Positions 1 to 51,957 of a stretch of DNA of 64,000 bases are shown one piece after another (the first letter of the stretch is position 1; each line of letters begins with the position of its first letter). The stretch spans positions 186,001-250,000 of IMG/VR virus record IMGVR_UViG_3300005253_001115. The stretch is one strand, 5' to 3'. Position numbers and translations under genes: made by a program. The notes under the pieces were generated by a model. That model was not told where the DNA came from and ran no database searches. It was given only the letters and a program-made list of their open reading frames with translations.

Positions 1-57
1 GGGCTTCAACTCGTTCTTCTAGCGTAGGGGTTTCATTTTCCATGCCCCTTCTTTAGC

Positions 58-357
58 CTAAGGACTATCTTCGTCCCTTACCAACTGGATGACGGGTGCG
101 TCTGGATGGCTGCCCTTCCTCAGAGGGGTTTTCATGACCGTTACAATGTAACCCTCCTGTAGTCCTCGGAGCTTGTCCCACAGCCGTCCAAATACGCCGG
201 ACCGTGCCAGCACCACAACGTGAGAAGCACAGAAATCTTCGAACTCTTCCTGGGTAAGTTTGAGGTGTCCCTCGTCCCCCAGGAACGCGATTAGTGCCTC
301 CTTGACCTGATTAGCCAGTCTGTCCAGGTCTTCGCCTGTGTAGGTGTAAACGTTCAT
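58..357 (-). CDS. hypothetical protein
   Basis: 99-aa ORF overlapping the ligase stop by 4 nt (coupled); no recognisable motif. Confidence 0.7.
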   Translation of the reverse strand: MNVYTYTGEDLDRLANQVKEALIAFLGDEGHLKLTQEEFEDFCASHVVVLARSGVFGRLWDKLRGLQEGYIVTVMKTPLRKGSHPDAPVIQLVRDEDSP

Positions 358-1739
358 ACAGTCTCCTTGGGAAGGTCGTCTCGTAGCCGCATGAAGACCG
401 GGTTCCGGGCAGCGTCACCGAGAGCGTGAGCATCCTTCTGTTGTGTCATTTCGATGATCATGCCGACAAGTTCATCTCGCCGAGTCCAGTGGTCCGCTCG
501 GTTCGCGTCACCCCGGACGTTACAGCGGGTCTCGGCACCGTTCGCCAGCCGAACCCGGTACCGACCGGCCCAATGCTCGTTACGCTTGCCCGCAGTTCCG
601 GGCATCACTTCTAGGAGGATGCCGTCAATGAACTCCTCTTCCTTACGCTTGAGCATGATGGGCGACCGGGACGGAAGATAAGGTGAGTTGAGATCCTTAA
701 TCATCGAGCCTTCGTGCTTCTCGCTCATGTACTGCTGGTGCGCGTCGGTAAGCTCCTCGTGGTTGTTGCAGATGACCTGGGGCATCAAGTTCGTAGAAGC
801 GTCCTCCTCACCTAGCGAGGCCACCAGCTTAACGAGATTCGCCCGCCGCTCATGGTGCGGCGTCCTGTCCATAGCGATCGTCGGATCGTACACGTCGAGA
901 CTGATGCGGTCGAAAGCCCAAAACTTCAACTCACTCTGAAGCTCAAGCCACATGTCGGGAGTAACCCGCTCCGGGCGGAAAATACCCTGGTAGGTGCCCG
1001 TCTTCAGCATGGCTGAAGTCTTTCCCCACGGCGACCTGTACTTCTTGCCACCGTAGGTGGAAAGAGGACCATTGGGTTCCCAATCAGCGTAGATTTCTCC
1101 ATCGACTGCGCCGTTGACGACTATCGGGGCCAACTCGTCAATGATGTGCTTGAGGACTTCGTTGTACTCCTTGCCGGAGCGGGTCTTCGCGACCCCTTTG
1201 CCGTCCGTGAAGACCATGGTAATGCGAAGCCCGTCATACTTGGGCTCGCAAGCTACCGGGAACTGAATCCCCATGTGGTGATCCTTGAACTTTTCTGCGA
1301 GGGAGACAGCGAAACTGGACGCTAGGTCAGGCCAGATCTCGCCGAAAGTGTTGACGTTCGCGCCAATCTGAAGGTTCCGGTTGAGGACGCGGCCGTACCA
1401 CTGAGCCCGATTGGGGTCGATGGCTCGCATGAAGCGGGTAATGGTGTCAATCGCTTCCTGCCCGGTGATGTTCCGAGCGGCAAGCTCATCGAGTATGGCG
1501 AGGAAAACGTCCCATTCCTCTTCCATCGAATACGAGTCGCCGAAGATGGCTTTTGCCTTGGGAAGGTCGAGCTGCTTCCATGTGATCCCATAGGTGGTCT
1601 TCCAGTCATAAGCCCGCCGAAACAACTCCTTCAAGATGGGGTTATTTGCGGCAGACCGCAGAAGATCCTTCTTCTCAGTCCGCTTGGAGGTGGCTTCGAC
1701 ATTCTCCAGGCACTTGATAGCGCGCTCTAGGTTCTGCAT
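354..1739 (-). CDS. ATP-dependent DNA ligase (T4 gp30-like)
   Basis: Motif I EPKYDGLR, DGEI, FWAFD, EGSMIK, MLKRK; N-terminal helical DNA-binding region and C-terminal OB-like end (NPVFMRLRDD). Confidence 0.93.
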   Translation of the reverse strand: MQNLERAIKCLENVEATSKRTEKKDLLRSAANNPILKELFRRAYDWKTTYGITWKQLDLPKAKAIFGDSYSMEEEWDVFLAILDELAARNITGQEAIDTITRFMRAIDPNRAQWYGRVLNRNLQIGANVNTFGEIWPDLASSFAVSLAEKFKDHHMGIQFPVACEPKYDGLRITMVFTDGKGVAKTRSGKEYNEVLKHIIDELAPIVVNGAVDGEIYADWEPNGPLSTYGGKKYRSPWGKTSAMLKTGTYQGIFRPERVTPDMWLELQSELKFWAFDRISLDVYDPTIAMDRTPHHERRANLVKLVASLGEEDASTNLMPQVICNNHEELTDAHQQYMSEKHEGSMIKDLNSPYLPSRSPIMLKRKEEEFIDGILLEVMPGTAGKRNEHWAGRYRVRLANGAETRCNVRGDANRADHWTRRDELVGMIIEMTQQKDAHALGDAARNPVFMRLRDDLPKETV

Positions 1740-1770
1740 TCATCTCTCTTCGGCGGTTAGCAGAGGAACT

Positions 1771-2343
1771 TTAGATAAAAACCAGTGCTTCGCTAACATC
1801 CGTAATTTCGTATCCCCAGCGTTCGTATTCGATTCCTGCGTTTGCTAGGTTAATAAGCGCCTGGGGATCGGTACCTGTGGCGTCGCCTTCCCATCGCTTG
1901 CCGGTCTCCGGGTCGCACTCAAACTTGTTCAGAGTGGGCCACACCACTCTGGTGATACCTGCTTGGATGATAGCCTGCGTGCAATTCGTACATGGAGGAC
2001 CAGTAAGATACATCGTCGCGCCCTTGAGCGCAACACCCTGGAAAGCAGCCGCGAAAACGGCGTTCCGGTCGCAGTGGGCGATATTAGCGTACTTGTACTC
2101 GCGATCAGCGTACAGCGCTTCATCGTCCGGGGCTCCCATCGGAAACCCGTTGTAACCCGTCGTGAGGATTCTCTTGTCCCTCTGGACAACGCAGCCAGTC
2201 TTGGTGCTGGGGTCCTTGGACTTCCGAGCCACAAGAAAGGCGATAGCGAGGAAATACTCGTCCCAGTTATCAATGTAGTCCTGCCTGCTAACGTCGTGCA
2301 ACAGGTCTTCCTTCGATACGGAACTGAATCTAAAGTCACTCAT
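1771..2343 (-). CDS. dCMP deaminase-like protein
   Basis: WDEYFLAIAFLVARKSKDPSTKTG, GYNGFP, HCDRNA (usually HAE), PPCTNC, IIQAGI; likely start MSDFRF at 2343 rather than 2601. Confidence 0.88.
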   Translation of the reverse strand: MSDFRFSSVSKEDLLHDVSRQDYIDNWDEYFLAIAFLVARKSKDPSTKTGCVVQRDKRILTTGYNGFPMGAPDDEALYADREYKYANIAHCDRNAVFAAAFQGVALKGATMYLTGPPCTNCTQAIIQAGITRVVWPTLNKFECDPETGKRWEGDATGTDPQALINLANAGIEYERWGYEITDVSEALVFI

Positions 2344-2875: not shown

Positions 2876-2967
2876 GTCACAACTCTTTAGAGTAGCAAGG
2901 AAGAAATTCTCAACTTTTTCTCAAGTTCCTCCCGAATCCTCCGAAGAGGAGATCAAAGGAGGCAGAG

Positions 2968-3537
2968 ATGCCCGCATCGAAACGAATGGTCCGAGGGGGT
3001 GGAGACTTGCCCAGGAACCCTGCCCGTCTCAAGAAGAAGTCCGCAGACGCCGCAGGAGCGCCGCAGGAGTCCGCGCAGTTGGAACTAGTACCGGAGCCCC
3101 AGTCGGCTTCCGTTCCGGGTTCTGCGCCCGCTCAGACCATCTGTCGTGTCGTGGGCCTCGTCATTACGATCAAGTCCAGCACCTTGAGGGAGTCGGAGGG
3201 CAAGAGCCGTGATGGAAAGCCCCCGGTATATCGCTCGGTTATAGGTAAAGATGCCGGTGGGAAGTCCTACTGGATGGCCCTTGAAATGAAGGAGGCCAAT
3301 CCCCAGAAGGGAGAGCAGTGGGTCGTCCAGGGACGTGAGCGGAAGGCTTTCGGCAAGGAAAAAGATCCGCTACATCCCATTGACGTTACGTCCTTTAAGC
3401 CATTCGAGGAAGATTCTTCAGAATGTGCTAAAGTCTCGTCCACGTCAGCCGATACTCTGGTGCAGACCATGGCAGGGTTGGTCCGAGAGCATGGCAACTA
3501 CACCGTTCTCAAGGCGCTCGCCGAAGCTATCAAATAG
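2968..3537 (+). CDS. hypothetical protein
   Basis: 189-aa ORF with GGAGG SD upstream. Confidence 0.65.
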   Translation: MPASKRMVRGGGDLPRNPARLKKKSADAAGAPQESAQLELVPEPQSASVPGSAPAQTICRVVGLVITIKSSTLRESEGKSRDGKPPVYRSVIGKDAGGKSYWMALEMKEANPQKGEQWVVQGRERKAFGKEKDPLHPIDVTSFKPFEEDSSECAKVSSTSADTLVQTMAGLVREHGNYTVLKALAEAIK

Positions 3538-4687: not shown

Positions 4688-4790
4688 AATAAAGACAAAG
4701 GGCTAAAGATTCGGCCTGCCAGGCCGAAGAGTAGAATATGCCTCACAGATGGGTGAGGCAGACTGAAGCGTAAGAAAAGGAATCAATCAA

Positions 4791-6608: not shown

Positions 6609-6728
6609 GGCACGGGGGCAGGGTCCATCTCTCCCTGTCCCCGAGGGGCCTCCAGGTAGTTGTGATTCCTCTGCCGGGAGGCCCCACTTTTCACTAAAGT
6701 AATCCGACGGGAGACCGAAGAGTAAAGT

Positions 6729-8825
6729 ATGGCTACAGACTACCTCACGGGGATCAAAACGAAGATCGAGCGGGGCGACCTCAAAGGTGCCGAGCGTGAT
6801 CTTCATCTCCTCATCACCACTAAGGACTTCATGAGGGTCTGGGGTCGTAATGACCTTCCCGTCCTCTGGGGACATATTTCCCACATTACGCTGGACGAGT
6901 CAATTGGTACTGCAAGCGTGAACCTTTATACCGGCAGGCTCATGATCGCTCCCTCTCTTCTTCTGAAGACGGTCCACTCGATCCATGATCTCCTGTTCAT
7001 CATTATGCACGAGCGCGACCATCGTCTGCTCCGGCGCATTTACCGGGTGGACTGGTTCCGCCTACGTAAGCTCCTCGACTACAATGAAGACTGGTTCGAC
7101 AAGGTGTCGGGAGTGGTTGAGGATGCCTGGATCAATGCTAGCGTGCGGTCTTCGATGGGCATCAAGTCTGGCTTTCCCGAGCAGTTCTATTGCTGGACTC
7201 AGGCAGACATTGACAATCCAGGAAAACCCACTCCCGAGAACCCAAGAACTTCTGGCTTCGATCCAGCTAAGAGGCACAAGCTCGGCGACCCCCGGTCCCC
7301 GGAGTTCGCGCTTTTTACCTGCCTTTCTCCCTTCGTCCATGACGACATTCAGAAAGGGCACGAGGGTTTGTACTCGGACACTGACGAACTGCTGAAGGAG
7401 CACGGTCTTACTCCGGTCTCGCACCGAACCAGCAATCCTCGTCGCCGCCATCACCGATACGACTACGGGCGATACGGTACCATGCTCTCGTTCCCAGAGT
7501 GGTACACTGTATTCTGTGATTGGCTGGAGATACACAAGGACGACCTTGCTCGGCCTGCCCCCGGTACCGAGCACGAGGAAGATTGCCCACAGCACCCAGA
7601 TAACAGCGAAGACGAAGGCGAGGGCGAAGGCGAGGGCGAAGGCGAGGGTGAAGGCGAGGGTGAAGGCGAGGGTGAAGGCGAGGGTGAAGGCGAGGGTGAA
7701 GGCGAAGGCGAGGGTGAAGGCGAGGGTGAAGGCGAGGGTGAAGGCGAGGGTGAAGGCGAGGGTGAAGGCGAGGGTGAAGGCTCTGGTTCGGGTGATGACG
7801 CCGATAAGAACGACCCCGCAAAAGGTCACGGACACGGCGGACGAAAGCCTTGCACCTGCAACGGTGGTAACGGCCTGCTCGACGAGCCGATGACTTTGAA
7901 GGAGCGCCTTGCCCGGATACCGGGTCTCATCAAGTCGATTGATGAAATCATGAACAAAGCTCTCGATAAGGACATTCGGCGGGATGCCGGGGACAAGGAC
8001 CCAAACGGCAAGGATCAGCCCATCGAGGTTATGGAAATGTCTGGTCCCAAGGGTGTTAGTTGGGGCGGCAAGGTCCACGGTACAGAGATCGTTCCTAAAG
8101 AGATAGAGGATCTTGACGACTTCGATCGTGGGCTCCTCGAAATGGGTGGCTCGACACTGACCGATTCCCATAAGACTGATACGGTACAAATCAAGGGTGC
8201 GGTAAAGCGCTACGCTGACGATCTGGTACAAAACATCGCTACCATGCGAGTAACGGACCACAGGATTATTCGACCGGATTTCAACATCCCCGCGCGACCG
8301 TCGCGGCGGGATATAATGAGCCTCGGTATGGGTTACATGCCGCCGATGTGGGACCACAACCAGTACCTTGAGCAGAACGAATTGATCGTTTACACGGATG
8401 TATCGGGCTCGATGAGTAACTGGTACTCGGTTGCCCTGTACCTAACGAAGCAACTGCGAGAGTTCGGCTGCACTGCCTACCAGTTTTCGACGGTGATTTG
8501 CCAGCCTGTTCCGGGTCGCGACGACAACATTTTCTGGGGTACGGGCGGGACGCACTTCAATGCAGTCGCCGCCCACATTAAGGCAAAGGGCTTCAAGTCG
8601 GTTATCATCATTACCGACAACTGCGACAACCTGTCTCCTGACTGGCACGAGTTTCTGAGGGATGAGGTTCCCGAGCTATACCTTGTGTTCCTTGAGGATG
8701 GTAATCGACCCCCAAACCTCGATGAGCAGAAGTACGGTTGGGGTGGTGGAAGTCGCGCTCGCGGTTTCTTTGGCACCTCTGAGAACATCACGGGTATTTT
8801 CGACTCGGATGTGGGGAAGAAGTAA
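6729..8825 (+). CDS. metallopeptidase-like plus vWA domain protein (MoxR partner)
   Basis: HExxH (HERDH) followed by an ED-x-x-IN motif; C-terminal MIDAS DVSGS, GGT, IIITD; central (GE)n linker. Confidence 0.82.
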   Translation: MATDYLTGIKTKIERGDLKGAERDLHLLITTKDFMRVWGRNDLPVLWGHISHITLDESIGTASVNLYTGRLMIAPSLLLKTVHSIHDLLFIIMHERDHRLLRRIYRVDWFRLRKLLDYNEDWFDKVSGVVEDAWINASVRSSMGIKSGFPEQFYCWTQADIDNPGKPTPENPRTSGFDPAKRHKLGDPRSPEFALFTCLSPFVHDDIQKGHEGLYSDTDELLKEHGLTPVSHRTSNPRRRHHRYDYGRYGTMLSFPEWYTVFCDWLEIHKDDLARPAPGTEHEEDCPQHPDNSEDEGEGEGEGEGEGEGEGEGEGEGEGEGEGEGEGEGEGEGEGEGEGEGEGEGEGEGEGSGSGDDADKNDPAKGHGHGGRKPCTCNGGNGLLDEPMTLKERLARIPGLIKSIDEIMNKALDKDIRRDAGDKDPNGKDQPIEVMEMSGPKGVSWGGKVHGTEIVPKEIEDLDDFDRGLLEMGGSTLTDSHKTDTVQIKGAVKRYADDLVQNIATMRVTDHRIIRPDFNIPARPSRRDIMSLGMGYMPPMWDHNQYLEQNELIVYTDVSGSMSNWYSVALYLTKQLREFGCTAYQFSTVICQPVPGRDDNIFWGTGGTHFNAVAAHIKAKGFKSVIIITDNCDNLSPDWHEFLRDEVPELYLVFLEDGNRPPNLDEQKYGWGGGSRARGFFGTSENITGIFDSDVGKK
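7614..7781 (+). repeat. in-frame microsatellite (GAAGGCGAGGGT)n encoding poly-(Glu-Gly)
   Basis: About 168 nt of 6/12-nt tandem repeat, directly visible. Confidence 0.97.
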
Positions 8826-10004: not shown

Positions 10005-10477
10005 ACATCATTAGCCGCGTGAGAGACTTCTTTTCACCTGCAACCAAACAGGTCACTACTGACATTTCACCTGCAACCAAACAGGTCACTACTGACAAGT
10101 GGGGCGACCTCTGGCTTGACCCACGCATCACGTACTCAGGAAATCAGCCGGACTTGGCAGCCTGCCAGCGGCGGAATTCCTTTGCGCACAACAAATGTCC
10201 GCATTGCGGACAAGAAGAATTGCGGCTGGGGCCGCGTGGAGGCATGTCGCAGAACATTCTGTGCGCAGCTTGCGGGTCTAAGTTCAACGATACTGGTATC
10301 TTTGGTATCGATCTTCTGCGGGATTGTACCAATCCAATCCCGGAAATGGACAACACCCCTGCAACACACGACCATTTCGGCACCGTACAGCCATCTGCGC
10401 CTGTAGTTCGCCAAGTAAGTACAGGACATCATCACCGACCGCCGTGGAGAAAGAACCCGTATATGAAAGAATCCTAA
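10001..10477 (+). CDS. zinc-ribbon hypothetical protein
   Basis: CPHC...CAAC; internal 11-aa duplication. Confidence 0.65.
   Translation: MNIISRVRDFFSPATKQVTTDISPATKQVTTDKWGDLWLDPRITYSGNQPDLAACQRRNSFAHNKCPHCGQEELRLGPRGGMSQNILCAACGSKFNDTGIFGIDLLRDCTNPIPEMDNTPATHDHFGTVQPSAPVVRQVSTGHHHRPPWRKNPYMKES
10032..10097 (+). repeat. 33-bp exact tandem duplication
   Basis: TTTCACCTGCAACCAAACAGGTCACTACTGACA twice, in frame (SPATKQVTTD x2). Confidence 0.95.
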
Positions 10478-10580
10478 AGTTTCGGTCAAATTGGCCGATT
10501 AGACTAAAGAATCCACAGAGAGTGTTATCTCTGTACTGTAGGGCCGAAAAATCGGTTCGAAAGAAGAAAAGAGGTGAAGC

Positions 10581-15337: not shown

Positions 15338-15597
15338 TCTGTTCCTCGATTATGATCACGCATCTGATTGATGGTGTACGTCCCAAAGGAGTAAAAGATT
15401 CCCTGGACGAACCCAAGCCAGCGATTGGCTTTGCCTAGCTTGTCTTCGGCAACGAATTCCTCGATCTTGTCGAGCATCCACTTGGCGTGAGCGTGAGCCT
15501 CAAGCGGCTCCGGCTCGGCGTCATCGGAAAATCTTGAGGCATTTACGTTCTCAAGCAATTCACGATATTGTTCTACTACGGCTAGATGGTGGTCCAT
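15325..15597 (-). CDS. hypothetical phage protein
   Basis: KANRWLGFVQG motif; CTAAAG-N7-ATG upstream. Confidence 0.7.
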   Translation of the reverse strand: MDHHLAVVEQYRELLENVNASRFSDDAEPEPLEAHAHAKWMLDKIEEFVAEDKLGKANRWLGFVQGIFYSFGTYTINQMRDHNRGTECSE

Positions 15598-15606
15598 GGT
15601 TTTCCT

Positions 15607-17967
15607 TTAGTCTATGCTGAAGGTACTGACGTTATCTTTTTTCGTCACCGTCCAATGGGTGTCGAACTGGGCAGCAGCGATGCCAGACCTGTGAGATGTA
15701 CAAATAACTGTATCTTGGATCAGCTTCGGAAGGAGTTGCGAGGCAAACGCCTCCTCACCGATCGGATCGAGTCCGTCACCGACCTCATCGAGAATGACCA
15801 AGTTGCAACGCTTCCGGGGTGATACCAGCTCGGCTAGGGAGAAGATCATGGCAACCGCCAGCCGCTTCTTCTCGCCGCCGCTCAGCTTGCCGACCGGGTA
15901 CTCTGATGTCCCCTCGGGGGTGAATCTCCGCACGAAAAACTCGATGTCTGTAGAGTCCGGGTCGTTGTCCACGAAGAACTCGACTCTGGGCTCCTGAAAC
16001 ATGATCGTGGTGTATTTGGGCAGGGTCCGACAGATCGCGTTACAGACCTTCTTCAGTTGGTGGATCTTCAGCCCCTTGGGACCGTAGGCAGCCTTCATGG
16101 CCTCGAAGAGCGACCTTCTGAGCTGCACGCTCTCCCAGACCGATAGCTGGGTATCAAGTTCACTGAGGCGATTCTGGAGCGTCTCAGCCGTCTTCTTGCT
16201 GGCTTCCGCCTGCTGCTTCTGGACTGCCAGCTCTGTCACGGCGTTCTGGTAAAATTCGGACATTTCCGAGATGTGGACGTACTCATCATCGGGGATAATG
16301 TCAATCTCCTCCATGCCAGAGAACTGCTCTTTCAGCACCTTGATGGTCTCCAGCTTCCCGAGGGACTTCTCCAGCTTGGATGACTTTTCGCGGTAATCCT
16401 CCAGCTTGGATACGTCAAGAGAGTCAGGGAACTCGACCAGAGACTCGACTATCTCAGCCAGTCGCTTGGAGATACGGACGTTCTCTCTAGCCTGCTCCAG
16501 AACTTCCTGCATCGGTGGGATGCTCTTCTCTGTCTCGTCAATGCTCTCCCTGTGCTCTGTAAGATCAATCGTCGGAAGCTCACCAATCTGAGCTGCCAGT
16601 TTGTTGTACTCGTCCAAAGTATCGCACAAGCCTCTGAGTGCCACGACCTCTGTTGTGGTGGTCTTCAGAGCTGACTTCATGGTCCTGGCCATTCCCTCGG
16701 CCTTGGTAAGCTGCTCGGCAATGGCTTCGGTATCGAGCGGCTGTCCACAAGTGGGGCACTCCGACTCTGTGAGTTTGGCTAGCTTGGTAATGTTTGTCTT
16801 GGACTCCTCAAGCTGGTGCTCGATGACGCTCAACGCGCCTTGTGCATCCTTCAAACGTTCGGGCACGTCGTCACCGATTTGTCTTACCTGGGGGAGCTTC
16901 TCCTCCAGAACAATACGCCGCCTAATGCCATCAAGCTCCGCTTGCAGCTTAGCCAGACGGGTCTGAGACCTGCCTAGAGACGCAGCCGCCTCTTGTTCCG
17001 TCATGCCTACGTCTGAATCGTAGGCTGCCTCCAACTCGGTCTTCTCAGAAACTAGAGCCTCAAGCTCTTCCAGTTTCGAGATGCGAGCGTTGAGCTTGCG
17101 CAACTTGGCTTGCCGTGTTTCGGACACGTCATTCACATCTAGTTCATCCCACTTGGGAAACATCAGGTCTAGCTTCTGCCGGACACCCTTACGGTCCGCA
17201 TAGCGCGATAGAGTCGAATCGGCTTCCTTGATGCGAGCACCCCACACGGCGTTTTTGTCATGTACGAACTGGGACGTGTTCTCGATACTGTCGGACATGG
17301 CCGCGAAGTCGGCGGAAGACATGGGGAGGGCAGCAAGCTGGGATTCTACCTCGTCCCTTACAGCAGCCTTCTCTGATAGAGCTGCAATCTGTGCCTTAAC
17401 TGCCTCCAGCTCGTCATCAACACCCTCCTTCACAAGGTCGTAGCGGTCGAGGCTGAACAGGTCAGACAGGTAATTCCGCTTCTCTGCTCCCTTGCCAGAG
17501 ATTAGTACGTGACCCGCGCCCTCCTGGGCTAGATACACGTACCCTCGGAATTCCTCTTCGGTGATCCCGATGATTTCCTTGATGTAGGTGATGCAATCGG
17601 CCATGTGACGAGTACCCTTAGGGGTAACGTCTACCTTGTCCTTGTAGATCTTGTAGCCGTTGGTGCGCTCTTGCTTCTTGGCACCACGGAACTGAAGGAT
17701 CTTGTACTCGTGGGAATCGACTTCTAGGATCAACTCTGCGAAGTAGCCGTCACCAGCGAACTGGTTCCGGGCGAAGCCTTTGGAGGTGGAAGAGAACAGG
17801 ATGTGCTGTAGCACCTCGAAGATGGTACTCTTGCCAGCGCCGTTGCTGCCGCCGGTATCCTTGTTATCGCCCTTGAGAAACACCCGTCCCTGGTGCTCCA
17901 AAGGGATCAATACAGTTTCTTGGAATGTAACGGCGTTCTTATACCGCAGACTTTTGAATCGAATCAT
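15607..17967 (-). CDS. sbcC: SbcC/Rad50/gp46-like SMC ATPase
   Basis: Walker A SNGAGKST, Q-loop YLAQ, coiled coil with zinc hook CPTCG, signature LSGGE, Walker B ILDE, H-loop TSH. Confidence 0.93.
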   Translation of the reverse strand: MIRFKSLRYKNAVTFQETVLIPLEHQGRVFLKGDNKDTGGSNGAGKSTIFEVLQHILFSSTSKGFARNQFAGDGYFAELILEVDSHEYKILQFRGAKKQERTNGYKIYKDKVDVTPKGTRHMADCITYIKEIIGITEEEFRGYVYLAQEGAGHVLISGKGAEKRNYLSDLFSLDRYDLVKEGVDDELEAVKAQIAALSEKAAVRDEVESQLAALPMSSADFAAMSDSIENTSQFVHDKNAVWGARIKEADSTLSRYADRKGVRQKLDLMFPKWDELDVNDVSETRQAKLRKLNARISKLEELEALVSEKTELEAAYDSDVGMTEQEAAASLGRSQTRLAKLQAELDGIRRRIVLEEKLPQVRQIGDDVPERLKDAQGALSVIEHQLEESKTNITKLAKLTESECPTCGQPLDTEAIAEQLTKAEGMARTMKSALKTTTTEVVALRGLCDTLDEYNKLAAQIGELPTIDLTEHRESIDETEKSIPPMQEVLEQARENVRISKRLAEIVESLVEFPDSLDVSKLEDYREKSSKLEKSLGKLETIKVLKEQFSGMEEIDIIPDDEYVHISEMSEFYQNAVTELAVQKQQAEASKKTAETLQNRLSELDTQLSVWESVQLRRSLFEAMKAAYGPKGLKIHQLKKVCNAICRTLPKYTTIMFQEPRVEFFVDNDPDSTDIEFFVRRFTPEGTSEYPVGKLSGGEKKRLAVAMIFSLAELVSPRKRCNLVILDEVGDGLDPIGEEAFASQLLPKLIQDTVICTSHRSGIAAAQFDTHWTVTKKDNVSTFSID

Positions 17968-22224: not shown

Positions 22225-22299
22225 TACAGCTCCTTATCAACTATCAGCTTAGGGTTTACATAACCCCTTGCACAACGTCTTTAGTCTCACCGCTCTCGG

Positions 22300-30978: not shown

Positions 30979-32181
30979 TTATTCTACTGTATGGAAGCGC
31001 ATGAGCGCGAGCGTTTGTCTGAGTTGCTCCTTTAGAATGTCCGGTTCAGTAAGGGCCTCATCGGCCTCTATATGAGAGATAACACCGAATTTCAGGCAGA
31101 TGAACTTCTGGGACGTAGAATCAAGCGAGGTAAGCATTTTTCCGATCGCCATCCCCAACTCCCTCTCCGCAACGTCTTCCTCGTAGTCGGCATCAATCAA
31201 GGTATCTAGCAATTTGGCTATTTCTTCACCCTGTTGGACAGGCTGCTCAAGCGGAACCAACTTAATGACACTCACGTACTGACGAATCTTCTCGCTATTT
31301 TCGTCAACCTTTTCGCCTCTTTCTATCTTGTTGTACACATGCCACACGGCACCGGGGATGCGAAAGAAGCTGACCTCTTCCTTCAGAGAGAGGAGAATTG
31401 CCTGCCGGACCCACCACCGGGCGTAGGAAGAAAAGTACGTCTGGCGGCTCAGGAAAAAGGTCGAGATGGACCTGATAAGGCCAAATACCCCAGACTGGAA
31501 CACGTCCTCGAAAATAGACCTCTGGTCCCCGGAAAGTTTTCCTGCCTCAGCGAAAACAAGTCTCAGGTAAGGCTGGATGATAATGTTCCTCAGTTCCAGA
31601 TAGCGATCGTAATGATACTGTACTCCGCTGATGGTTCCGTAGAGTCGCTCTTGAGAGAGCCCTGTGGCTCTCTCAATGGCGTCCTTGCCCAATCGGATGC
31701 TGCCTAGCTTGGCCCCCAGAGCGGGCCGCAGAGAGGCACACAGGATGGCCTCGTCGGCGCACATTTCCTTATAGCCCTCTGTGATCCGCAGAAAGTCATC
31801 AGCTAGTTCCTCGAACAGTAGGCGTACCCAACACATCTTCCGAAGAAGCTTCTTCGTTTCACGTATGTTAGAATACGTCTTTCGGCTAGCCGTGAGGTGT
31901 AGAAGTTCCCCGCCCAGAGCGTGCCACTGATCTTGGCTAGCTTCGGTTTTGTTAAATAGAACCCTATTGTAGGTCATATTGCCCATCGAGCGTATCGTCA
32001 CCTCAGACAAGCGGTTCTCCACGAAGCGCGTGGGGGCGTCCAGCATGTACCCCATACACTTCCAGATCTCCTCATCCATCATCTCGAAGGTGCTGTTGCT
32101 CTTTTCTCGGCTCAAAAGATCGTCGTTTCCGAAGACTCCTGCCCGGATGTGTTCTAGTGCGTCGGTTGTTTGTAATTCCAT
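30979..32181 (-). CDS. sigma-70 family RNA polymerase sigma factor
   Basis: Region 2: YLRLV...EDVFQSGVFGLIRSI...FSSYARWWVRQAI; region 3/4-like LEQPV, ICLKFG. Confidence 0.82.
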   Translation of the reverse strand: MELQTTDALEHIRAGVFGNDDLLSREKSNSTFEMMDEEIWKCMGYMLDAPTRFVENRLSEVTIRSMGNMTYNRVLFNKTEASQDQWHALGGELLHLTASRKTYSNIRETKKLLRKMCWVRLLFEELADDFLRITEGYKEMCADEAILCASLRPALGAKLGSIRLGKDAIERATGLSQERLYGTISGVQYHYDRYLELRNIIIQPYLRLVFAEAGKLSGDQRSIFEDVFQSGVFGLIRSISTFFLSRQTYFSSYARWWVRQAILLSLKEEVSFFRIPGAVWHVYNKIERGEKVDENSEKIRQYVSVIKLVPLEQPVQQGEEIAKLLDTLIDADYEEDVAERELGMAIGKMLTSLDSTSQKFICLKFGVISHIEADEALTEPDILKEQLRQTLALMRFHTVE

Positions 32182-33188: not shown

Positions 33189-34131
33189 CCGTCTCCTCTC
33201 CGAGCACCTCTCGCTCGGCTTTCTTGATCTTAATGAGTTCCCTGCGTTTTCCCTTCAGGAACTTAGTCCGGTCCGGTCGGAAACATTGACCGGCGAACTC
33301 ACAATAGCGCATCTTACGCGCATATTTCTCGTTGGGGCAGATGGCCCTGGCATCCTCGATGTTGCCCTTCTTCATGATCTCCTTGACCTCGGGGTACTCG
33401 ACCCGGAAGTCCTCTAGCGCCTGGGGCGCAAGATCATGGAACATGAAGCGCATCTTATTGGGGTAATCCCTCGGAATGTAACAGAAAGCGATTCCCTCGA
33501 TATCCTGATCCAGACCCCAATCCCTCGGGGTGCAGAGTTCGGCGTATGTTCCCGCTTGGGCTACGTGTGGGGGATCAGGCTCCTTCAGGGCTCTCACAAC
33601 AGACGAGGACGCCTTCGTTTTGACCTCAAGTAGGTACAGGTGCCCCCCGATAAGAATGAGGCCGTCACAGGAGCCCTTGAGCCCTGAGACGGGATCTATC
33701 AGCTCGAACTCGACGTACCGAGTAGCGAAACCCTTGCAGCAAGGGCCTTCCTCGGGTCCGATAGGGTTGCCTTCCCTGTCCTCCCCACGGGTCCATTCTG
33801 ACCGATGATCCCCGCAATAGGGTGTCCCCAGACCCGGGGATGAGGTATACCAGCACTTCTTGCACTTCCACCTACCGTAAAGGAGCCCTACGCGCCCCAG
33901 GTAAGTCTGGATGACCTCATGGGTCGCAGTTCCGATATTGACGAAGATCTTTCCCATGAAATTGTCACCCACGGAGGCGTTAATGGGGTCCAACATCGCG
34001 AAAAGGTACTCGATTTGACAGAAGGGGAACGAAGATGGCCGAATCCGCACCTTGTACGGGGCCTTCCAGCTCTCGTTCTCAAGCAGCTCCTTCGAGACGT
34101 TCTCAAGGATCTTGTCATGGTTCGCTGTCAT
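33175..34131 (-). CDS. Cas4-like PD-(D/E)xK exonuclease
   Basis: RPSSFPFC, GTATHE, GSCDG, LLEVKT, QAGTY, C-terminal C..C..C Fe-S-type cysteines. Confidence 0.8.
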   Translation of the reverse strand: MTANHDKILENVSKELLENESWKAPYKVRIRPSSFPFCQIEYLFAMLDPINASVGDNFMGKIFVNIGTATHEVIQTYLGRVGLLYGRWKCKKCWYTSSPGLGTPYCGDHRSEWTRGEDREGNPIGPEEGPCCKGFATRYVEFELIDPVSGLKGSCDGLILIGGHLYLLEVKTKASSSVVRALKEPDPPHVAQAGTYAELCTPRDWGLDQDIEGIAFCYIPRDYPNKMRFMFHDLAPQALEDFRVEYPEVKEIMKKGNIEDARAICPNEKYARKMRYCEFAGQCFRPDRTKFLKGKRRELIKIKKAEREVLGEETDGSD

Positions 34132-34138
34132 GCAACTT

Positions 34139-34151
34139 CTTTAGTCTAAAG
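34139..34151. promoter_or_regulatory. palindromic CTTTAG-T-CTAAAG element serving two divergent genes
   Basis: Each CTAAAG lies exactly 7 nt before the ATG of the Cas4-like gene (34131) or the primase (34159). Confidence 0.6.
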
Positions 34152-34158
34152 GCTTGTC

Positions 34159-35100
34159 ATGGAACGAAAACCAAAACCCGAACTAGACAGAGATTTTATT
34201 GTTGACCAGTTGGAGCGAGTTTGCTCAGATACCAAGATCCACCGGCATGATATAGCCATCCCCTGTCCATTCAAGGCCCACTCCAATCCCAAGCCGTCCT
34301 GCATGGTACACCTATCCGGCCACAAGACCGGAGTGGGCGTGTTCCATTGCTGGAAGTGCGATGCTAAGGGCGGGTGGCCCCGACTAGCCGAGGCTCTGGG
34401 CCTGGAATACGGCGAGAACTACGCTCCCCAGAACCCCTTTAGTGCAAAAAGCCGCGCCATGAAGCAAATTCGGGCGGATGCCGACGAGCAGCTTGAGGCC
34501 CGGTATCGCGATTTCATGCCTCTTGGGGTGACACCTTGGGAGCATGGAGCCTTTCGAGGGCTGCCAGAAGAGTTTCTAGTCAAGGTCGGGGCGAAGAGGT
34601 TCTACGACGACCAGACCGAGTGTTACCGAATCGTATTCCCCGTTAAGAACAAGAACGGGACCACGTTGGGTAGCGTTGCTCGAAGGACTGACAAGGGCAC
34701 CTTCATGCCCTGGCTTAACGCTCCCGGACCCTGGGCTCGGCGAGCGCTGTTCCCTCTACACATCTTGGATCGGCCCCTGGAAACCGTGGTTCTGGTTGAG
34801 GGTTCTTTCGACTCTCTGCGCCTCTGCTATCTGGGAATCCCTGCCCTCTCCATCCTCGGAGCATCTAATTGGACGCCCACCAAACTGAGTACACTGCAAG
34901 GTATGGGCTGCAAGAAGCTCATCATCTGTATGGACGGTGATAAAGCAGGTCGAATAGCTGAGGCACAGATCTTCGAGGAAACAGCAGACAAGATCAAGCG
35001 CAAGAGGTTCCGGTTGCCCATCAACGTAGCAGATCCCGTTGACCCAGGTAACATGAACGAGGAGTTGATCGAGGCTCTCAGAGAGTTCGGCGGCTTTTAG
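34159..35100 (+). CDS. DnaG-like DNA primase
   Basis: Zinc finger CPF..H...FHCWKC; TOPRIM VLVEGSFD, ICMDGDKAG, DPG. Confidence 0.88.
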   Translation: MERKPKPELDRDFIVDQLERVCSDTKIHRHDIAIPCPFKAHSNPKPSCMVHLSGHKTGVGVFHCWKCDAKGGWPRLAEALGLEYGENYAPQNPFSAKSRAMKQIRADADEQLEARYRDFMPLGVTPWEHGAFRGLPEEFLVKVGAKRFYDDQTECYRIVFPVKNKNGTTLGSVARRTDKGTFMPWLNAPGPWARRALFPLHILDRPLETVVLVEGSFDSLRLCYLGIPALSILGASNWTPTKLSTLQGMGCKKLIICMDGDKAGRIAEAQIFEETADKIKRKRFRLPINVADPVDPGNMNEELIEALREFGGF

Positions 35101-46830: not shown

Positions 46831-47585
46831 CCTTGTTCTCCTTCGGCTTTCAGCCTATTTTCAGCAATTTCAAAAAAACTCTCGTCCATCTCGAAACCCA
46901 GTCCAACCCTGTTGGTTCTCTGGGCTGCCAGAAGCGTCGTACCCGATCCTGCGAATGGATCGAGCACTGTAGCACCTTCTTGGGTCATCCACAAGAGGAA
47001 TTGTTTAGCGAGCGCCACCGGTTTCTGTGTGGGGTGTCCGCACTTCTCCTTGCTTCCCAGAGTAAACACCCAATCTTCAATCTCCGATATTCTCTTGCGC
47101 TCTACTAACTCACCTTTCCTCTTCACATCTATGGGGTTGAGAGAAGGCTTGCCTTTGGCAAGGTAGATAATTGGTTCCCAGTCCCGCTTCGCGGCACCTT
47201 TCAAATCACCGCCGATAGCGAACCGCTTGTTCCAGGCGATTGTTCCTTTGTACGTGAACCCCGACCGTTTTATGTTCTCCCAACGCTGTCCCAAGAAGGG
47301 CGGATTAGCGTGCAGCACGCAATAACTGTCGTCTTTCAACACCCTGAAGCACTCTGAGAAGAAGTCGTCCCAGGCAATAGCGGCGTTCTCTTCCGGTTCG
47401 TCCCCCGCGATGGGTTTTGAGAAACGGCTCTTAGATTCGCCGGATTTGTTCCAATTTTTCGATCCGGGTATATTTGAAACGTACCCAAGGCCATACGGTG
47501 GGTCCGTCAATACCAGATCCACAGACCCCTCTGTCACCTTCGGCAACAGGTCTTCCCACCTACCCCAGTGCATTCCGTTTAGCAT
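46827..47585 (-). CDS. beta-class N4-C/N6-A DNA methyltransferase
   Basis: VDLVLTDPPY, IAWNK, HPTQKP, VLDPFAGSGTT. Confidence 0.92.
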   Translation of the reverse strand: MLNGMHWGRWEDLLPKVTEGSVDLVLTDPPYGLGYVSNIPGSKNWNKSGESKSRFSKPIAGDEPEENAAIAWDDFFSECFRVLKDDSYCVLHANPPFLGQRWENIKRSGFTYKGTIAWNKRFAIGGDLKGAAKRDWEPIIYLAKGKPSLNPIDVKRKGELVERKRISEIEDWVFTLGSKEKCGHPTQKPVALAKQFLLWMTQEGATVLDPFAGSGTTLLAAQRTNRVGLGFEMDESFFEIAENRLKAEGEQG

Positions 47586-47598
47586 ACTCCTCTTTAGT

Positions 47599-48318
47599 CT
47601 ACCACTCTACAAGAGTGCCGAGGGATGTTTTTGCTTCTTCAAGAATCTTCTCCGCTTCCTCCAAAGAAGTAAAAGTGCCAAGAGAAAGGACAACCCGGTA
47701 CTGGTCTTCGAGCCCAGCCACCCGTTTTTTTCCTTTGTGGCTAAGGGGTTTTGTGGTAGCTTTTTGCCTGTAAATCCCCGGAGGTAAATCTCTGTTAAGG
47801 GTTGTGCGCCTGTTGAGTGTTTGTTGCCTATGTGTTGCCCACCGCAAATTACCGGGTTCATAGTTTCCGTCGTTGTTAATTCGATCAAGAGAGTGCTCTT
47901 CGGGGCGTGGTCCCAGGTTTTCCTCCAGCCACCGTATAAACGCGCCTGCGTCGTCTATCCACGGCTCATACATCTTAATGCCACGAGCACTGTAGTAGGC
48001 ATGATACTTGCGACTTTTTCCACCACATCTTTCTTTAATGGAACACCACAGAGAGTACATAGGATTCTTTCCTCCTACTGGACTATATCCGTGCTTCTGT
48101 CTGTGCATATTTGCGCCGCAACTTTTGGTTACACCACTCACACAATTGCCCAAATATACAATTTTCTCGACACCGCATTCACATATAGTGGCGACCTGAC
48201 GACCGTTCTTTATTGTGGGAAACACCTCGTGTAGTACGGTCAGGGTTCCATAGACATTCCCCACCACATCCTTAGGCAAGGAACTACGTCGGCGCTTCCA
48301 GTTTTCTCCTCGGGGCAT
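47599..48318 (-). CDS. HNH homing endonuclease with AP2-like C-terminus
   Basis: CECG...SCG, Y..RGI, SLDRINNDGNYEPGNLRWAT, LGTFTSLEEA; start probably MPRGEN. Confidence 0.85.
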   Translation of the reverse strand: MPRGENWKRRRSSLPKDVVGNVYGTLTVLHEVFPTIKNGRQVATICECGVEKIVYLGNCVSGVTKSCGANMHRQKHGYSPVGGKNPMYSLWCSIKERCGGKSRKYHAYYSARGIKMYEPWIDDAGAFIRWLEENLGPRPEEHSLDRINNDGNYEPGNLRWATHRQQTLNRRTTLNRDLPPGIYRQKATTKPLSHKGKKRVAGLEDQYRVVLSLGTFTSLEEAEKILEEAKTSLGTLVEW

Positions 48319-49228: not shown

Positions 49229-49602
49229 TCGCTGACCTTGCGGTCAGGGTTGCGGGCGCTCCACTTCTTGCCCCTCTGGGCACGGCGGCGCTCCTCGAAT
49301 GCAGACTGCCCATCGTCACCAAGAGGGTGACGGTCGGACATGGCAATCTTCGTATTGACAGCCGCAGCCATCCCTTTCACCGCATCCTTGAGGCCACGGA
49401 TGCGATCCTTCTCATCGCCGTCCATGTTGCCCGTCCAGATACGGAGGGTATTCTTGCGGAACTTACGACGACGCGCAACGTCCGGGTCCCCGGAGGACAT
49501 GGGGACAGCATCAAGGAAAACTGCCGAGGGGTCAATCCCGAGGAACGTAGCGACATCATCAACAAGGCCGACCTGCTTTCTGCGAGACTTGGGCACGGGC
49601 AT
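49225..49602 (-). CDS. hypothetical protein
   Basis: 125-aa ORF with a GAGGAG SD upstream; weak similarity to the 48336 ORF (FLGIDP / FGINP). Confidence 0.6.
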   Translation of the reverse strand: MPVPKSRRKQVGLVDDVATFLGIDPSAVFLDAVPMSSGDPDVARRRKFRKNTLRIWTGNMDGDEKDRIRGLKDAVKGMAAAVNTKIAMSDRHPLGDDGQSAFEERRRAQRGKKWSARNPDRKVSE

Positions 49603-49715
49603 CTCTTACTCCTCGGTCTCTGCGGCTCAGAACTTTAGCGAAAACTTATACCGGGTGTGGTTTCCCACTTGAACGGCTTCTCAGCGGTTTCCCGCTCCAC
49701 CACGCAGCCCGGCGG

Positions 49716-50583: not shown

Positions 50584-50796
50584 TCAATGTAACAGCGCTC
50601 TACGCTGCAACACCTGCGCCATGGCAGCCTTGAAGTTGGCTGCTGCGATCAGTATGTCCTGGGTGTTTCGGTCTTTCACCACCTGTACCAACTCATCGAG
50701 AGGCAGTGGCTCCAACGATTCTGCGAACGTAACGAACGCCCGAGACAGCGTGGGCAGATCTGCAAGTACATCGTTAACTGATAGATTCTTCATCAA
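50584..50796 (-). CDS. hypothetical protein
   Basis: Small ORF in a minus-strand run. Confidence 0.5.
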   Translation of the reverse strand: MMKNLSVNDVLADLPTLSRAFVTFAESLEPLPLDELVQVVKDRNTQDILIAAANFKAAMAQVLQRRALLH

Positions 50797-51088
50797 AAAA
50801 CTGCCTCAAGACCACTTTGGTACGGTCGGCAATGACCATACCCATCGCTTCCACCACGGCTTCCACCGGACCGTTGTATGAGCCTACTAGCAAGTTTCCC
50901 GCCAACACCCGGGAAGGACCCTCGTCCCGTATGTGGACAGTGTATCCCTTGATCGTCAGGATTCCGGTTGAGGAGTCTGCCTTGACGTGGAAGTCGTGAG
51001 AGTCCTCAGGACCGCCCTCAAACAGCTCCACTGCCCTTTCGGCTGCCATCAGGGCCTTGCTGAAATTACTCATCTTGCTCTGGTCCAT
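50774..51088 (-). CDS. hypothetical protein
   Basis: 104-aa ORF. Confidence 0.55.
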   Translation of the reverse strand: MDQSKMSNFSKALMAAERAVELFEGGPEDSHDFHVKADSSTGILTIKGYTVHIRDEGPSRVLAGNLLVGSYNGPVEAVVEAMGMVIADRTKVVLRQFFDEESIS

Positions 51089-51290
51089 ACTGAACTCCCA
51101 TTCGCTCCTCGTAGGAGGGCGTCTTAGGGTAGAGATCTTTTACCCTTTGTTGGCGTTTTTCTTCCTCATCCCACGCAACCGCTCTATTTTTTGCGTCCTG
51201 CCACAAAAGAAAATGCACCCAGCCAAACACAGAGATGACGATCCCTGCGGGAAGCCATGCAACTACAGTGACCCAGACCTCAGCGTTCAT
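51066..51290 (-). CDS. small membrane protein
   Basis: N-terminal hydrophobic helix. Confidence 0.55.
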   Translation of the reverse strand: MNAEVWVTVVAWLPAGIVISVFGWVHFLLWQDAKNRAVAWDEEEKRQQRVKDLYPKTPSYEERMGVQYGPEQDE

Positions 51291-51600
51291 GACGCTTTCT
51301 CAGGCCGAACCAGAACTCTTGCATCTTGCCCAGCATGTAGTGGGTGATCTCCCCCACGCTGAGTTTGGCGATCACTGAATCGATGCCACAAAAGGGGCAC
51401 AGTGCCGTGGCGTTACCGTGCATACCTGCATCCGGCATGCGAGATAAGAACGGGGTATCGTCAATCCACTCCTTGATAGGAAAATCCAGAGGGTCCCAGA
51501 TGCGCTCGCAACAGAAACACCCCACCTGATTCGATGCCTCGATGGCGTGTCGATTCAGAGTGGACTTGCTGTGGATCTCGTGAAGCTGGCTTTCATTCAT
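51280..51600 (-). CDS. zinc-binding hypothetical protein
   Basis: GCFCC...EWID...TALCPFCGIDSV. Confidence 0.7.
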   Translation of the reverse strand: MNESQLHEIHSKSTLNRHAIEASNQVGCFCCERIWDPLDFPIKEWIDDTPFLSRMPDAGMHGNATALCPFCGIDSVIAKLSVGEITHYMLGKMQEFWFGLRKRHER

Positions 51601-51957
51601 GAGTTACCTTTAGACAAGCTGAAAAAGTTTGGCTCCAATCCCGAATTTCTAAAAAGCTGGCGTATCTCTGTGGTAGTTCCGGGAACGATCAACCCGGGTA
51701 CGATAGCAGCAGACGTGGAGAATGTACGGAGTTCTCTCCCGATGGCCACTGGCGCTGCGCCAATAGGCGATTCTGGTTTTGGGGCGTCTCCCTGAGGTCC
51801 AGATGAATTGTATCCAAAGACCAGAGACATCTGCGAGGACTAGGGCAACCAGAGAACAACTGCTCCACTGTAACACATGATATCACCCCAATATTGATAT
51901 GAAATAGAGTAGATAGCATGACTCTGATACACAAGCCACCCACCAACTTGAAGGAAT

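What the first reader, a model, noticed from the sequence alone, without database searches (positions are those of the whole stretch)
51..51613. Recurrent CTAAAG-N7-ATG motif: candidate phage-sigma promoter giving leaderless mRNAs
Seen: CTAAAG lies exactly 7 nt upstream of the ATG at 51-56(-) (a putative gene truncated by the window edge), 15605-10(-), 34139-44(-), 34146-51(+), 38605-10(+) and 51608-13(-). The spacing is 6 nt at 47592(-) and 9 nt at 2885(-). It also occurs further upstream at 1769, 4703, 6694, 10504, 49633 and 62553. At 34139-34151 it forms a palindrome placed symmetrically between two divergent genes that lack an SD. Inference: a -10-only promoter, analogous to the T4 late promoter, read by the phage sigma factor (30979-32181), with the transcription start at or near the ATG. 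Caveat: some copies overlap TAA stops or resemble an SD.
Basis: partly seen in the sequence, partly recalled or inferred. Interest (0 to 1): 0.6.

Follow-up and report, generated by a model that had tools for sequence, protein, structure and literature searches.

The report
CTAAAG marks two phage promoter classes
The repeated CTAAAG word is a real, conserved promoter signal of an uncultured 267-kb marine-sediment phage, but it works in two ways: right in front of start codons (probably giving messenger RNAs with no leader), and as the upstream half of a two-part promoter that looks exactly like those read by the bacterial flagellar sigma factor.

Summary
All listed copies exist. CTAAAG-N7-ATG occurs 6 times in the window (0.33 expected) and 18 times in the 266,640-bp genome (about 2.4 at other spacings). 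CTAAAG is the most enriched hexamer upstream of genes. Non-coding copies point toward the next gene 53:11. The motif is kept in relatives whose sigma is 59-91% identical.

The motif falls into two architectures.

- **Class A:** TA[GC]N-CTAAAG-N6-C-ATG, with no Shine-Dalgarno (SD) sequence. It precedes DNA polymerase, primase, exonuclease and methyltransferase genes. Its invariant A lies 11 nt before the A of ATG, the geometry of a -10 element on a leaderless mRNA.
- **Class B:** CT[A/C]AAG-15/16 nt-CCGA[A/T][G/A]A, 36 sites. It equals the sigma-28/FliA promoter in sequence and spacing, so here the hexamer is a -35 box.

The genome shows one RpoD-like sigma gene and no phage RNA polymerase. Which sigma reads which class is inferred, not shown. 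No RNA data exist.

The parts
41..60 (-). Class A site: CTAAAG (51-56), 7 nt, ATG (41-43). The 50-codon ORF runs off the window's left edge.
   Evidence: orthologous N7 site in L104:8292
1740..1774 (-). Class B (sigma-28-type) promoter: CTAAAG 1769-1774, 15 nt, CCGAAGAG. ATG of the DNA ligase gene (354-1739) begins 29 nt after the hexamer.
   Evidence: kept in L104:6865 and L105:8455
2876..2894 (-). Class A variant: TACT-CTAAAG (2885-2890), 9 nt, ATG of the 179-aa gene 2336-2875.
   Evidence: orthologues at N7 in L105:7197 and L106:2874
2920..2970 (+). Class B promoter with a CTCAAG -35 box, 15 nt, CCGAAGAG. A leader with SD AAAGGAGG follows, then the ATG of gene 2968-3537.
4703..4740 (+). Class B promoter upstream of the ATPase-like gene 4791-6008. 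ATG at N29 opens only 11 codons and is followed by a hairpin.
   Evidence: the orthologue L104:14250(-) has CTCAAG instead
6694..6731 (+). Class B promoter directly after a strong terminator-like hairpin. ATG of the 698-aa gene (6729-8825) lies 29 nt after the hexamer.
   Evidence: kept in L104:2048(-) and L105:4162(-)
10474..10580 (+). Tandem pair. A class B promoter (10474-10498) is followed at once by TAGA-CTAAAG (10504-10509). A 71-nt structured leader then leads to the NadR-like gene 10581-11693.
15595..15614 (-). Class A site before the 90-aa gene 15325-15597. Its TAA is also the stop codon of the SbcC-like gene 15607-17967.
22279..22284 (-). CTAAAG 54 nt upstream of the clamp-loader-like gene 21154-22224, with an SD in between.
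   Evidence: a copy 52 nt upstream of the orthologue in L009:18256
30979..32181 (-). The only sigma-70-family gene found in the genome (400 aa, RpoD-like).
34129..34161 (.). Back-to-back class A sites in the 27-nt gap between the Cas4-like exonuclease gene (33175-34131, -) and the primase gene (34159-35100, +). Each lies 7 nt from its ATG.
   Evidence: kept in L007, L026, L031, L032, L035 and L009
38601..38620 (+). Class A site (TACT-CTAAAG, 7 nt, ATG) before the 62-aa ORF 38618-38806.
   Evidence: same in L026:1200(-)
47583..47601 (-). Class A variant (TAGA-CTAAAG, 6 nt, ATG) before the DNA methyltransferase gene 46827-47585.
49600..49638 (-). Class B promoter (16-nt spacer, CCGAGGAG). ATG of the 125-aa gene 49225-49602 lies 30 nt after the hexamer.
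51598..51613 (-). Class A site before the 106-aa gene 51280-51600.
61080..61104 (-). Class B-type site (CTAAAG, 15 nt, CCGAAGAG) in non-coding DNA.
62553..62558 (-). Unclassified copy 15 nt before the ATG of ORF 62301-62537. Its TAA is the stop codon of gene 62555-63565 and it lacks the TA upstream. Promoter role doubtful.

Best explanation
CTAAAG is a strand-specific promoter hexamer of an uncultured jumbo phage (266.6 kb, marine sediment). The phage shows no RNA polymerase gene of its own and one RpoD-like sigma gene. The hexamer is used in two architectures. Class A is the 10-mer TA[GC]N-CTAAAG followed by 6 nt, a C and ATG. Read as a -10 region (T-12, A-11), it puts the transcription start on the A of ATG, so these genes (DNA polymerase, primase, Cas4-like exonuclease, endonuclease VII, methyltransferase and others) would be made from leaderless mRNAs. 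Class B is CT[A/C]AAG, 15-16 nt, CCGA[A/T][G/A]A. This is the sigma-28/FliA promoter, and the hexamer is its -35 box. With fliC numbering, the ATG that follows CCGA by 10 nt in about a third of the sites is again +1. The other class B sites have leaders with an SD. What is shown: the motifs, their spacing, orientation, conservation and the lack of SD. What is inferred: that they are promoters and where transcripts start. A weaker inference concerns who reads them. Class B (12 sites in a 13-kb block of small genes, and the only motif matching a bacterial sigma consensus) may be the early class read by a host sigma-28-like holoenzyme. Class A may be read by the phage sigma, which keeps the group-1 residues that read T-12 and A-11.
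For: CTAAAG-N15-CCGA occurs 16 times and N16 6 times, against about 0.8 at other spacings. In the window the count is 7 against 0.25. An unbiased dyad search of non-coding DNA returns only CTAAAG-linked dyads at the top (TAGA-n-TAAA, TAAA-N16-CCGA, CTAA-N8-CATG) and no TTGACA/TATAAT pair. TATAAT occurs once in non-coding DNA. Sigma-70-type sites are not enriched in the right-end region scanned (11 against 8.5). Orientation is 53:11. Class A genes have an SD core in 4 of 17 cases (random 12%, other genes 48-72%) and C at -1 in 15 of 17 against 26%. When the hexamer lies 20-50 nt upstream, an SD lies in between. Conservation: N7-ATG occurs 11 times against about 1.7 in 140 kb of relatives. The primase/exonuclease pair keeps the hexamer while the spacers differ. 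The primase N-terminus LDRDF starts 2-8 residues after that ATG. Class B is kept at the orthologous ligase, 698-aa and ATPase genes, and CTAAAG swaps with CTCAAG between orthologues. Literature: the sigma-28 consensus is TAAAGTTT-n11-GCCGATAA (PMC2859248), and P. aeruginosa fliC has (-36)TCTAAAG(-30) and (-15)GCCGATAA(-8) with A-11 flipped (PMC12784957). No T7-like or multisubunit RNAP and only one sigma were found. Strong terminator-like hairpins sit just upstream of two sites.
Against: There is no transcript evidence. No RNA run holds this DNA. In some relatives the class A spacing is 8 or 10 nt, which would leave a 1-3-nt leader or move the start. Half of the class A sites read CTAAAGG, and AAGG at that distance could act as a weak SD. 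The same hexamer serving as a -10 in one class and a -35 in the other is an unexplained coincidence. CTCAAG is not a good FliA -35 box. The phage sigma is not group-3-like, and the host is unknown, so a host FliA is an assumption. The genome is estimated 89% complete, so a second factor could be missing. My gene calls are crude: 285 genes covering 85% of the genome.
Confidence: 0.6

Rival explanations
1. One reading: every CTAAAG copy is one -10-only promoter read by the phage sigma. The ATG-distal copies simply have 5' leaders of about 22-30 nt that contain a conserved CCGAAGAGTAA ribosome-binding or regulatory region.
For: The same hexamer occurs in both sets. GAGGAG or GAAGAG lies 6 nt before the ATG in the N29 sites. 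A few leaders can form a TCGG...CCGA hairpin.
Against: The distance CTAAAG-CCGA is fixed at 15-16 nt even where the ATG is far away. The composite equals the sigma-28 consensus in sequence and spacing. Class B accepts CTCAAG and has no TA[GC]N upstream, while class A is strict. The hairpin is present in only about 5 of 15 sites.
Confidence: 0.12
2. The phage sigma itself has evolved sigma-28-like specificity and reads class B through its regions 4 and 2. Class A is then read by something else: the host sigma, an undetected gp55-like factor, or the same sigma in an extended -10 mode.
For: The sigma has a probable region 4 with a conserved REQ(L/I)RQT helix. Both motif classes and this sigma family are confined to the same clade. 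PaBG, NCTB and RSL1, which have a syntenic but distant sigma, have neither class.
Against: The sigma keeps WW where group-3 sigmas have the Arg that reads G-12. FliA_WhiG is a far weaker match than the RpoD-type models. If class B is the early class, the sigma would have to be delivered with the virion.
Confidence: 0.2
3. The ATG-proximal CTAAAG is a translation signal (an SD-like or other ribosome-binding element) on mRNAs that start further upstream.
For: A spacing of 6-10 nt is the SD range. AAAGG can pair with the CCUUU part of many 16S 3' tails. 8 of 14 sites have G after the hexamer.
Against: C, T and the upstream TA are invariant although they would not pair. Canonical GGAG-type SDs are the norm in this genome. 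The same extended motif occurs 20-71 nt upstream of other genes that have their own SD. In the 27-nt divergent gap there is no room for any other promoter. C at -1 fits a start-site rule, not an SD.
Confidence: 0.06
4. The enrichment is an artefact of TAA stop codons (termination-reinitiation junctions) or of coding repeats.
For: The TAA of the hexamer is in frame with the ATG at N7. Two window copies (15605, 62553) are real stop codons. Three paralogous genes share a coding repeat with the hexamer.
Against: Only 1 of 18 N7 sites ends a called gene, and the upstream open frames are mostly 3-24 codons. The enrichment is counted on raw sequence.
Confidence: 0.02

Closest known systems
Sigma-28 (FliA / SigD / WhiG, group 3) promoters of bacterial flagellar genes
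   Same: Class B has the same -35 word (P. aeruginosa consensus TCTAAAG). It has the same 15 nt between TAAAG and CCGA, and the same -10 core CCGA(T/A)A. Half of the sites read CCGATA.
   Different: Class B lies on a phage, in front of ligase, NAD-salvage, lysis-type and many small unknown genes. The -35 box also accepts CTCAAG. The -10 is often CCGAAGAG. The ATG often sits at the predicted +1. No FliA-like sigma is encoded.
T4 late promoter (TATAAATA, read by gp55 with gp33 and the gp45 clamp)
   Same: Class A is a short motif at the -10 position with nothing conserved at -35. The phage has T4-like replication and recombination genes.
   Different: The sequence is different. The genes served are replication genes, not late structural genes. 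The sigma is a 400-aa RpoD-like protein, not a minimal gp55. T4 late mRNAs have leaders.
Leaderless genes of Actinobacteria and Deinococcus-Thermus, and lambda cI from PRM (my own knowledge)
   Same: A -10-type element with A at -11 from the first base of the start codon. No SD. ATG is preferred. Pyrimidine at -1 and purine at +1.
   Different: The -10 word is TAAAGN rather than TANNNT. The feature is tied to phage-specific motif classes, and it is predicted only.
RpoD-like sigma factors of 'group 2' jumbo phages (for example PaBG gp118)
   Same: The sigma-SSB-UvsX gene order matches PaBG gp118-117-116. Jumbo phages without an RNAP but with an RpoD-like sigma are described (PMC7824862; PMC7412058).
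   Different: Cognate promoters of those sigmas are not given in those papers. PaBG, NCTB and RSL1 carry neither CTAAAG class.
Dense early-promoter blocks such as the SPO1 host-takeover module (my own knowledge)
   Same: 12 class B promoters in 13 kb, each before 1-3 small genes, at one end of the contig.
   Different: In SPO1 the promoters are read by the primary sigma. Here they look like sigma-28 promoters.

Membership tests
sigma-28/FliA-type promoter | -35 box TAAAG (TCTAAAG in P. aeruginosa) | tested here: met
   CTAAAG at 22 sites. CTCAAG (14) and a few CTGAAG also occur, which departs from the consensus.
sigma-28/FliA-type promoter | Fixed spacer: 11 nt between the octamers, which is 15 nt from TAAAG to CCGA | tested here: met
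   N15 16 times and N16 6 times, against about 0.8 at any other spacing from 0 to 39. In the window, 7 against 0.25.
sigma-28/FliA-type promoter | -10 box GCCGATAA | tested here: met
   CCGA is followed by A/T, G/A, A. About half read CCGATA and the rest CCGAAGAG. The core CGA[TA] is kept in relatives.
sigma-28/FliA-type promoter | Transcription depends on a group-3 sigma; start 7-8 nt after the -10 box | not testable with these tools
   No RNA runs; host unknown.
T4-type late promoter | TATAAATA at -10 | tested here: not met
   The class A consensus is TA[GC]N-CTAAAG.
T4-type late promoter | Read by a minimal gp55-type sigma with gp33 and the sliding clamp | tested here: not met
   The only sigma found is 400 aa. 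It aligns to RpoD regions 1.2-4.2, and Foldseek's best hits are sigma-70. gp55 and gp33 homologues were not searched specifically.
leaderless transcription unit | -10-type element with A at -11 from the first base of the start codon | tested here: met
   Class A: CTAAAG-N7-ATG. Class B: CCGA-N10-ATG. In both, the invariant A is 11 nt before the A of ATG.
leaderless transcription unit | No Shine-Dalgarno sequence | tested here: met
   4 of 17 class A genes have an SD core, against 48-72% of other genes and 12% at random.
leaderless transcription unit | mRNA 5' end at the start codon | not testable with these tools
   No transcript data.
sigma-70 family (the gene at 30979-32181) | Region 2 with the aromatic residues that read the -10 box | tested here: met
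   Pfam Sigma70_r2 6e-10. The FSxYARWWxRQ motif is invariant in 29 family members.
sigma-70 family (the gene at 30979-32181) | Region 4 (binds the -35 box) | tested here: inconclusive
   No Pfam r4 hit. However, phmmer alignments to RpoD reach residue about 390. A conserved REQ(L/I)RQT helix is present. AF2 predicts helices at 331-396 with pLDDT 55-70.
group 3 (FliA) sigma | Arg at the position of sigma-70 W434 | tested here: not met
   The phage sigma has WW. The rule comes from PMC12784957. FliA_WhiG scores only 35 bits, below the RpoD-type models.

The most novel reading that the evidence does not exclude
The phage starts infection with promoters keyed to the host's flagellar sigma-28, so early genes fire only in motile, flagellated cells, as would suit a flagellum-binding phage. 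It then switches to its own RpoD-like sigma, which reads a -10-only TA[GC]N-CTAAAG element and makes leaderless mRNAs. The shared hexamer (sigma-28 -35 box and phage-sigma -10 box) would let the two sigmas compete for or hand over the same sites.
Probability: 0.2. Interest if true: 0.8.

Novelty: new variant of a known kind. Interest (0 to 1): 0.55.

Why it matters
Promoters of uncultured jumbo phages that carry their own sigma factor are essentially unknown. This locus provides two sharply defined, clade-conserved promoter classes that can be cloned and tested with purified sigma and core polymerase. If class B really depends on a flagellar-type sigma, it would be a new way for a phage to sense the state of its host. 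If class A and a third of class B give leaderless mRNAs, the phage would be a compact model for leaderless expression. The result also improves annotation, because the motifs fix start codons and operon boundaries.

Tried and rejected
- **Near-DNA search in the phage collection:** no match.
- **Single-protein scans of viral contigs** with primase and sigma: only distant relatives or none. Relatives were reached instead through the protein word search and contig look-ups.
- **Whole-record search behind L007 and L009:** those records are not held, so motif counts in relatives rest on about 190 kb of fetched loci.
- **RNA evidence:** the stretch is held only by DNA runs of marine sediment metagenomes.
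- **Rfam on the window:** nothing.
- **Terminator-before-promoter test:** only about 4-5 of 47 sites have a clear hairpin plus T-run upstream, so support is weak.
- **Hairpin TCGG...CCGA in class B leaders:** present in a minority of sites. Rejected as the reason for the fixed spacing.
- **Class A as a sigma-28 -35 box with its -10 inside the ORF:** rejected. No CCGA lies at N15-17, and the conserved N-termini begin at that ATG.
- **Canonical sigma-70 promoters:** not enriched.
- **A second sigma:** weak region-4 hits at window 56644-57540 and genome 98514-99302 are ordinary HTH proteins. The latter looks like a GIY-YIG endonuclease.
- **Other motifs:** k-mer searches for a further (late) motif gave only TTATCTC and CTTATA, not followed up.


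Full report
**What the window is.** The window is bases 186,001-250,000 of a single 266,640-bp contig (GC 53%). IMG/VR classes the contig as a linear virus record, about 89% complete. The same DNA is held only by marine sediment metagenomes, and no RNA run holds it. The contig encodes T4-like replication and recombination proteins: UvsX, an SbcC-like protein, primase, family B DNA polymerase, clamp loader, RNR and ligase. It also carries 33 tRNA genes. Pfam models found no T7-like or multisubunit RNA polymerase, though the T7-like model also matched none of the 14 control genomes, so that absence is weakly tested. One sigma-70-family gene was found, at window 30979-32181(-). The order sigma-SSB-UvsX is that of Pseudomonas phage PaBG gp118-117-116. 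This places the phage among the jumbo phages that lack an RNAP but carry an RpoD-like sigma (PMC7824862; PMC7412058).

**The observation.**
- CTAAAG-N7-ATG occurs 6 times in the window against 0.33 expected.
- In the whole genome the spacing histogram has a single sharp peak: 18 at N7 against about 2.4 elsewhere.
- CTAAAG is the most enriched hexamer in the 50 nt upstream of my 285 crude gene calls (33 against 4).
- An unbiased search for spaced 4-mer pairs in non-coding DNA returns only CTAAAG-linked pairs at the top.
- Non-coding copies point toward the next gene 53:11.
Only 1 of the 18 N7 copies uses its TAA as the stop of a called gene.

**Class A.** The ATG-proximal copies share a longer consensus, TA[GC]N-CTAAAG-N6-C-ATG. 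Nothing is conserved further upstream (26 sites from the genome and relatives). Single-base variants of the hexamer are almost absent in this position.
- The genes served are DNA polymerase, primase, a Cas4-like exonuclease, endonuclease VII, a DNA methyltransferase, a glycosyltransferase, an epimerase and small ORFs.
- These genes have an SD core in 4 of 17 cases. That compares with 12% of random windows and 48-72% of the other genes. They have C at -1 in 15 of 17 cases against 26%.
- Where the same extended motif lies 20-71 nt from a start codon, an SD lies in between.
- Reading TAAAGN as -12..-7 puts the A of ATG at +1 with a pyrimidine at -1.

This is the standard geometry of leaderless genes. 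That comparison rests on my own knowledge.

**Class B.** 22 copies of CTAAAG are followed by CCGA after exactly 15 nt (16 sites) or 16 nt (6 sites). About 0.8 are expected at any other spacing. In the window the count is 7 against 0.25. Allowing CTCAAG adds 14 more, so there are 36 sites of the form CT[A/C]AAG-15/16-CCGA[A/T][G/A]A.
- This is the sigma-28 promoter. The consensus is TAAAGTTT-n11-GCCGATAA (PMC2859248). In P. aeruginosa fliC the boxes are (-36)TCTAAAG(-30) and (-15)GCCGATAA(-8) (PMC12784957). The spacing is identical to the nucleotide.
In them CTAAAG is a -35 box.
- With fliC numbering the start falls 10 nt after CCGA. In 11-12 of the 36 sites an ATG begins there (0.6 expected), including the ligase gene and the 698-aa gene. 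Other sites, such as window 2920, have a leader with a good SD.
- Twelve class B sites lie in a 13-kb block of small genes at 250-264 kb. This looks like an early region.

In both classes the invariant A lies 11 nt before the A of the ATG. This is the strongest sequence argument that transcripts start on the start codon.

**Conservation.** The sigma belongs to a family of about 35 metagenomic proteins that are 52-91% identical. Syntenic loci were fetched from them.
- In 140 kb around their sigma genes, N7-ATG occurs 11 times against about 1.7.
- The divergent primase/exonuclease pair keeps a hexamer on each side in six relatives, although GC ranges from 42 to 52% and the spacers are unrelated. 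The spacing is 7, 8 or 10 nt.
- The conserved primase N-terminus begins 2-8 residues after that ATG, so the ATG is the true start.
- Class B is kept before the orthologous ligase, 698-aa and ATPase genes. CTAAAG in the window corresponds to CTCAAG in L104 at one orthologous promoter.
- PaBG, NCTB and RSL1 have neither class, so the motifs are specific to this clade.

**Who reads them (inference).**
- The sigma aligns with primary sigmas from region 1.2 to about region 4.2.
- Its best NCBIfam matches are MzaA, a sigma-70-family model, and RpoD-type models, and FliA_WhiG scores lower.
- The AF2 model (pLDDT 71) finds sigma-70 chains first.
- It keeps Y, WW and Q of regions 2.3-2.4. It has Leu-Leu where sigma-70 has T440 and R441, and it lacks the H455/E458 pair.
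- Group-3 sigmas have Arg at the W434 position to read G-12, and this protein does not.

I therefore favour two assignments: the phage sigma reads class A (T-12, A-11), and class B is read by a host sigma-28-type holoenzyme. Class B is the only motif in the genome that matches a bacterial sigma consensus, and canonical sigma-70 promoters are not enriched. The opposite assignment, or one sigma reading both classes, is not excluded. It remains unexplained why the same hexamer serves at -10 in one class and at -35 in the other.

**Verdict.**
- The promoter reading is well supported by sequence statistics and conservation.
- The leaderless reading is supported by geometry and by the lack of SD.
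- The link to the phage sigma is open.
- The library searches found no paper that describes phage promoters of the sigma-28 type or this motif. The library is incomplete.

Noticed in passing
whole genome (G000), for example no TCCGGA, CTCGAG, GAGCTC, GTCGAC or CTTAAG anywhere: Extreme palindrome avoidance. 22 of the 64 palindromic hexamers occur at most twice in 266,640 bp, although 8-94 copies of each are expected from their 5-mers. Palindromic 4-mers are near expectation. This suggests strong selection against many type II restriction sites.
   Followed up: partly
window 32182-32194 (+); also window 39042 (+), genome 251239 (+), 32078 (-): A third motif, TATCTCT(A), occurs 49 times against 27 expected, with 17 copies in non-coding DNA. 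In four places it sits 6 nt before an ATG, which again puts an A at -11. The copy in the 12-nt gap between the sigma gene and its divergent neighbour is kept in all eight relatives examined, at a fixed distance from the neighbour's ATG, not from sigma's. It may be a third promoter class. In some places it forms the 3' arm of a GAGAG-N4-CTCTC hairpin.
   Followed up: partly
window 10510-10580 (+); L105:1890-1975 (-): The 71-nt leader of the NadR-like (cytidyltransferase/NUDIX) gene folds into two hairpins that are kept in a relative with compensatory changes. There is no Rfam match. It could be an attenuator or a small riboswitch-like element for the NAD-salvage genes.
   Followed up: partly
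genome 250,000-264,300 (L023), minus strand: 12 sigma-28-type promoters, mostly with a CTCAAG -35 box, lie in 13 kb. Each precedes 1-3 small genes of unknown function, which gives the look of an early or host-takeover region.
   Followed up: partly
window 19262/19294 of the genome (L012/L013) and window 10474/10504: In two places a class B promoter is followed at once by TA[CG]A-CTAAAG, so that the predicted class B start falls inside the second hexamer. TAAAG also recurs 4 nt after CCGA in five other class B sites. Unexplained.
   Followed up: no
window 40728-43818 (-): Three tandem paralogous genes (288, 291 and 452 aa) share an internal coding repeat that contains CTAAAG. This causes the N38 bump in the spacing histogram.
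   Followed up: no
genome 1-24,100 (L012, L013): 33 tRNA genes lie in one block. Class A and class B sites sit between them, and one class A site directly follows tRNA-Thr.
   Followed up: no
L007:19865-21209 and L106:9912-11645: In relatives the RNR gene carries intein/LAGLIDADG insertions, and the PhoH gene carries a LAGLIDADG insertion. Both are absent from the window's copies.
   Followed up: no
window 35097-38192 (-): A 1031-aa protein with four Laminin_G_3 (concanavalin-like lectin) repeats and a virion-structural PHROG match lies next to the primase gene. In relatives it is split or fused differently: 269+758, 276+802 or 1345 aa.
   Followed up: no
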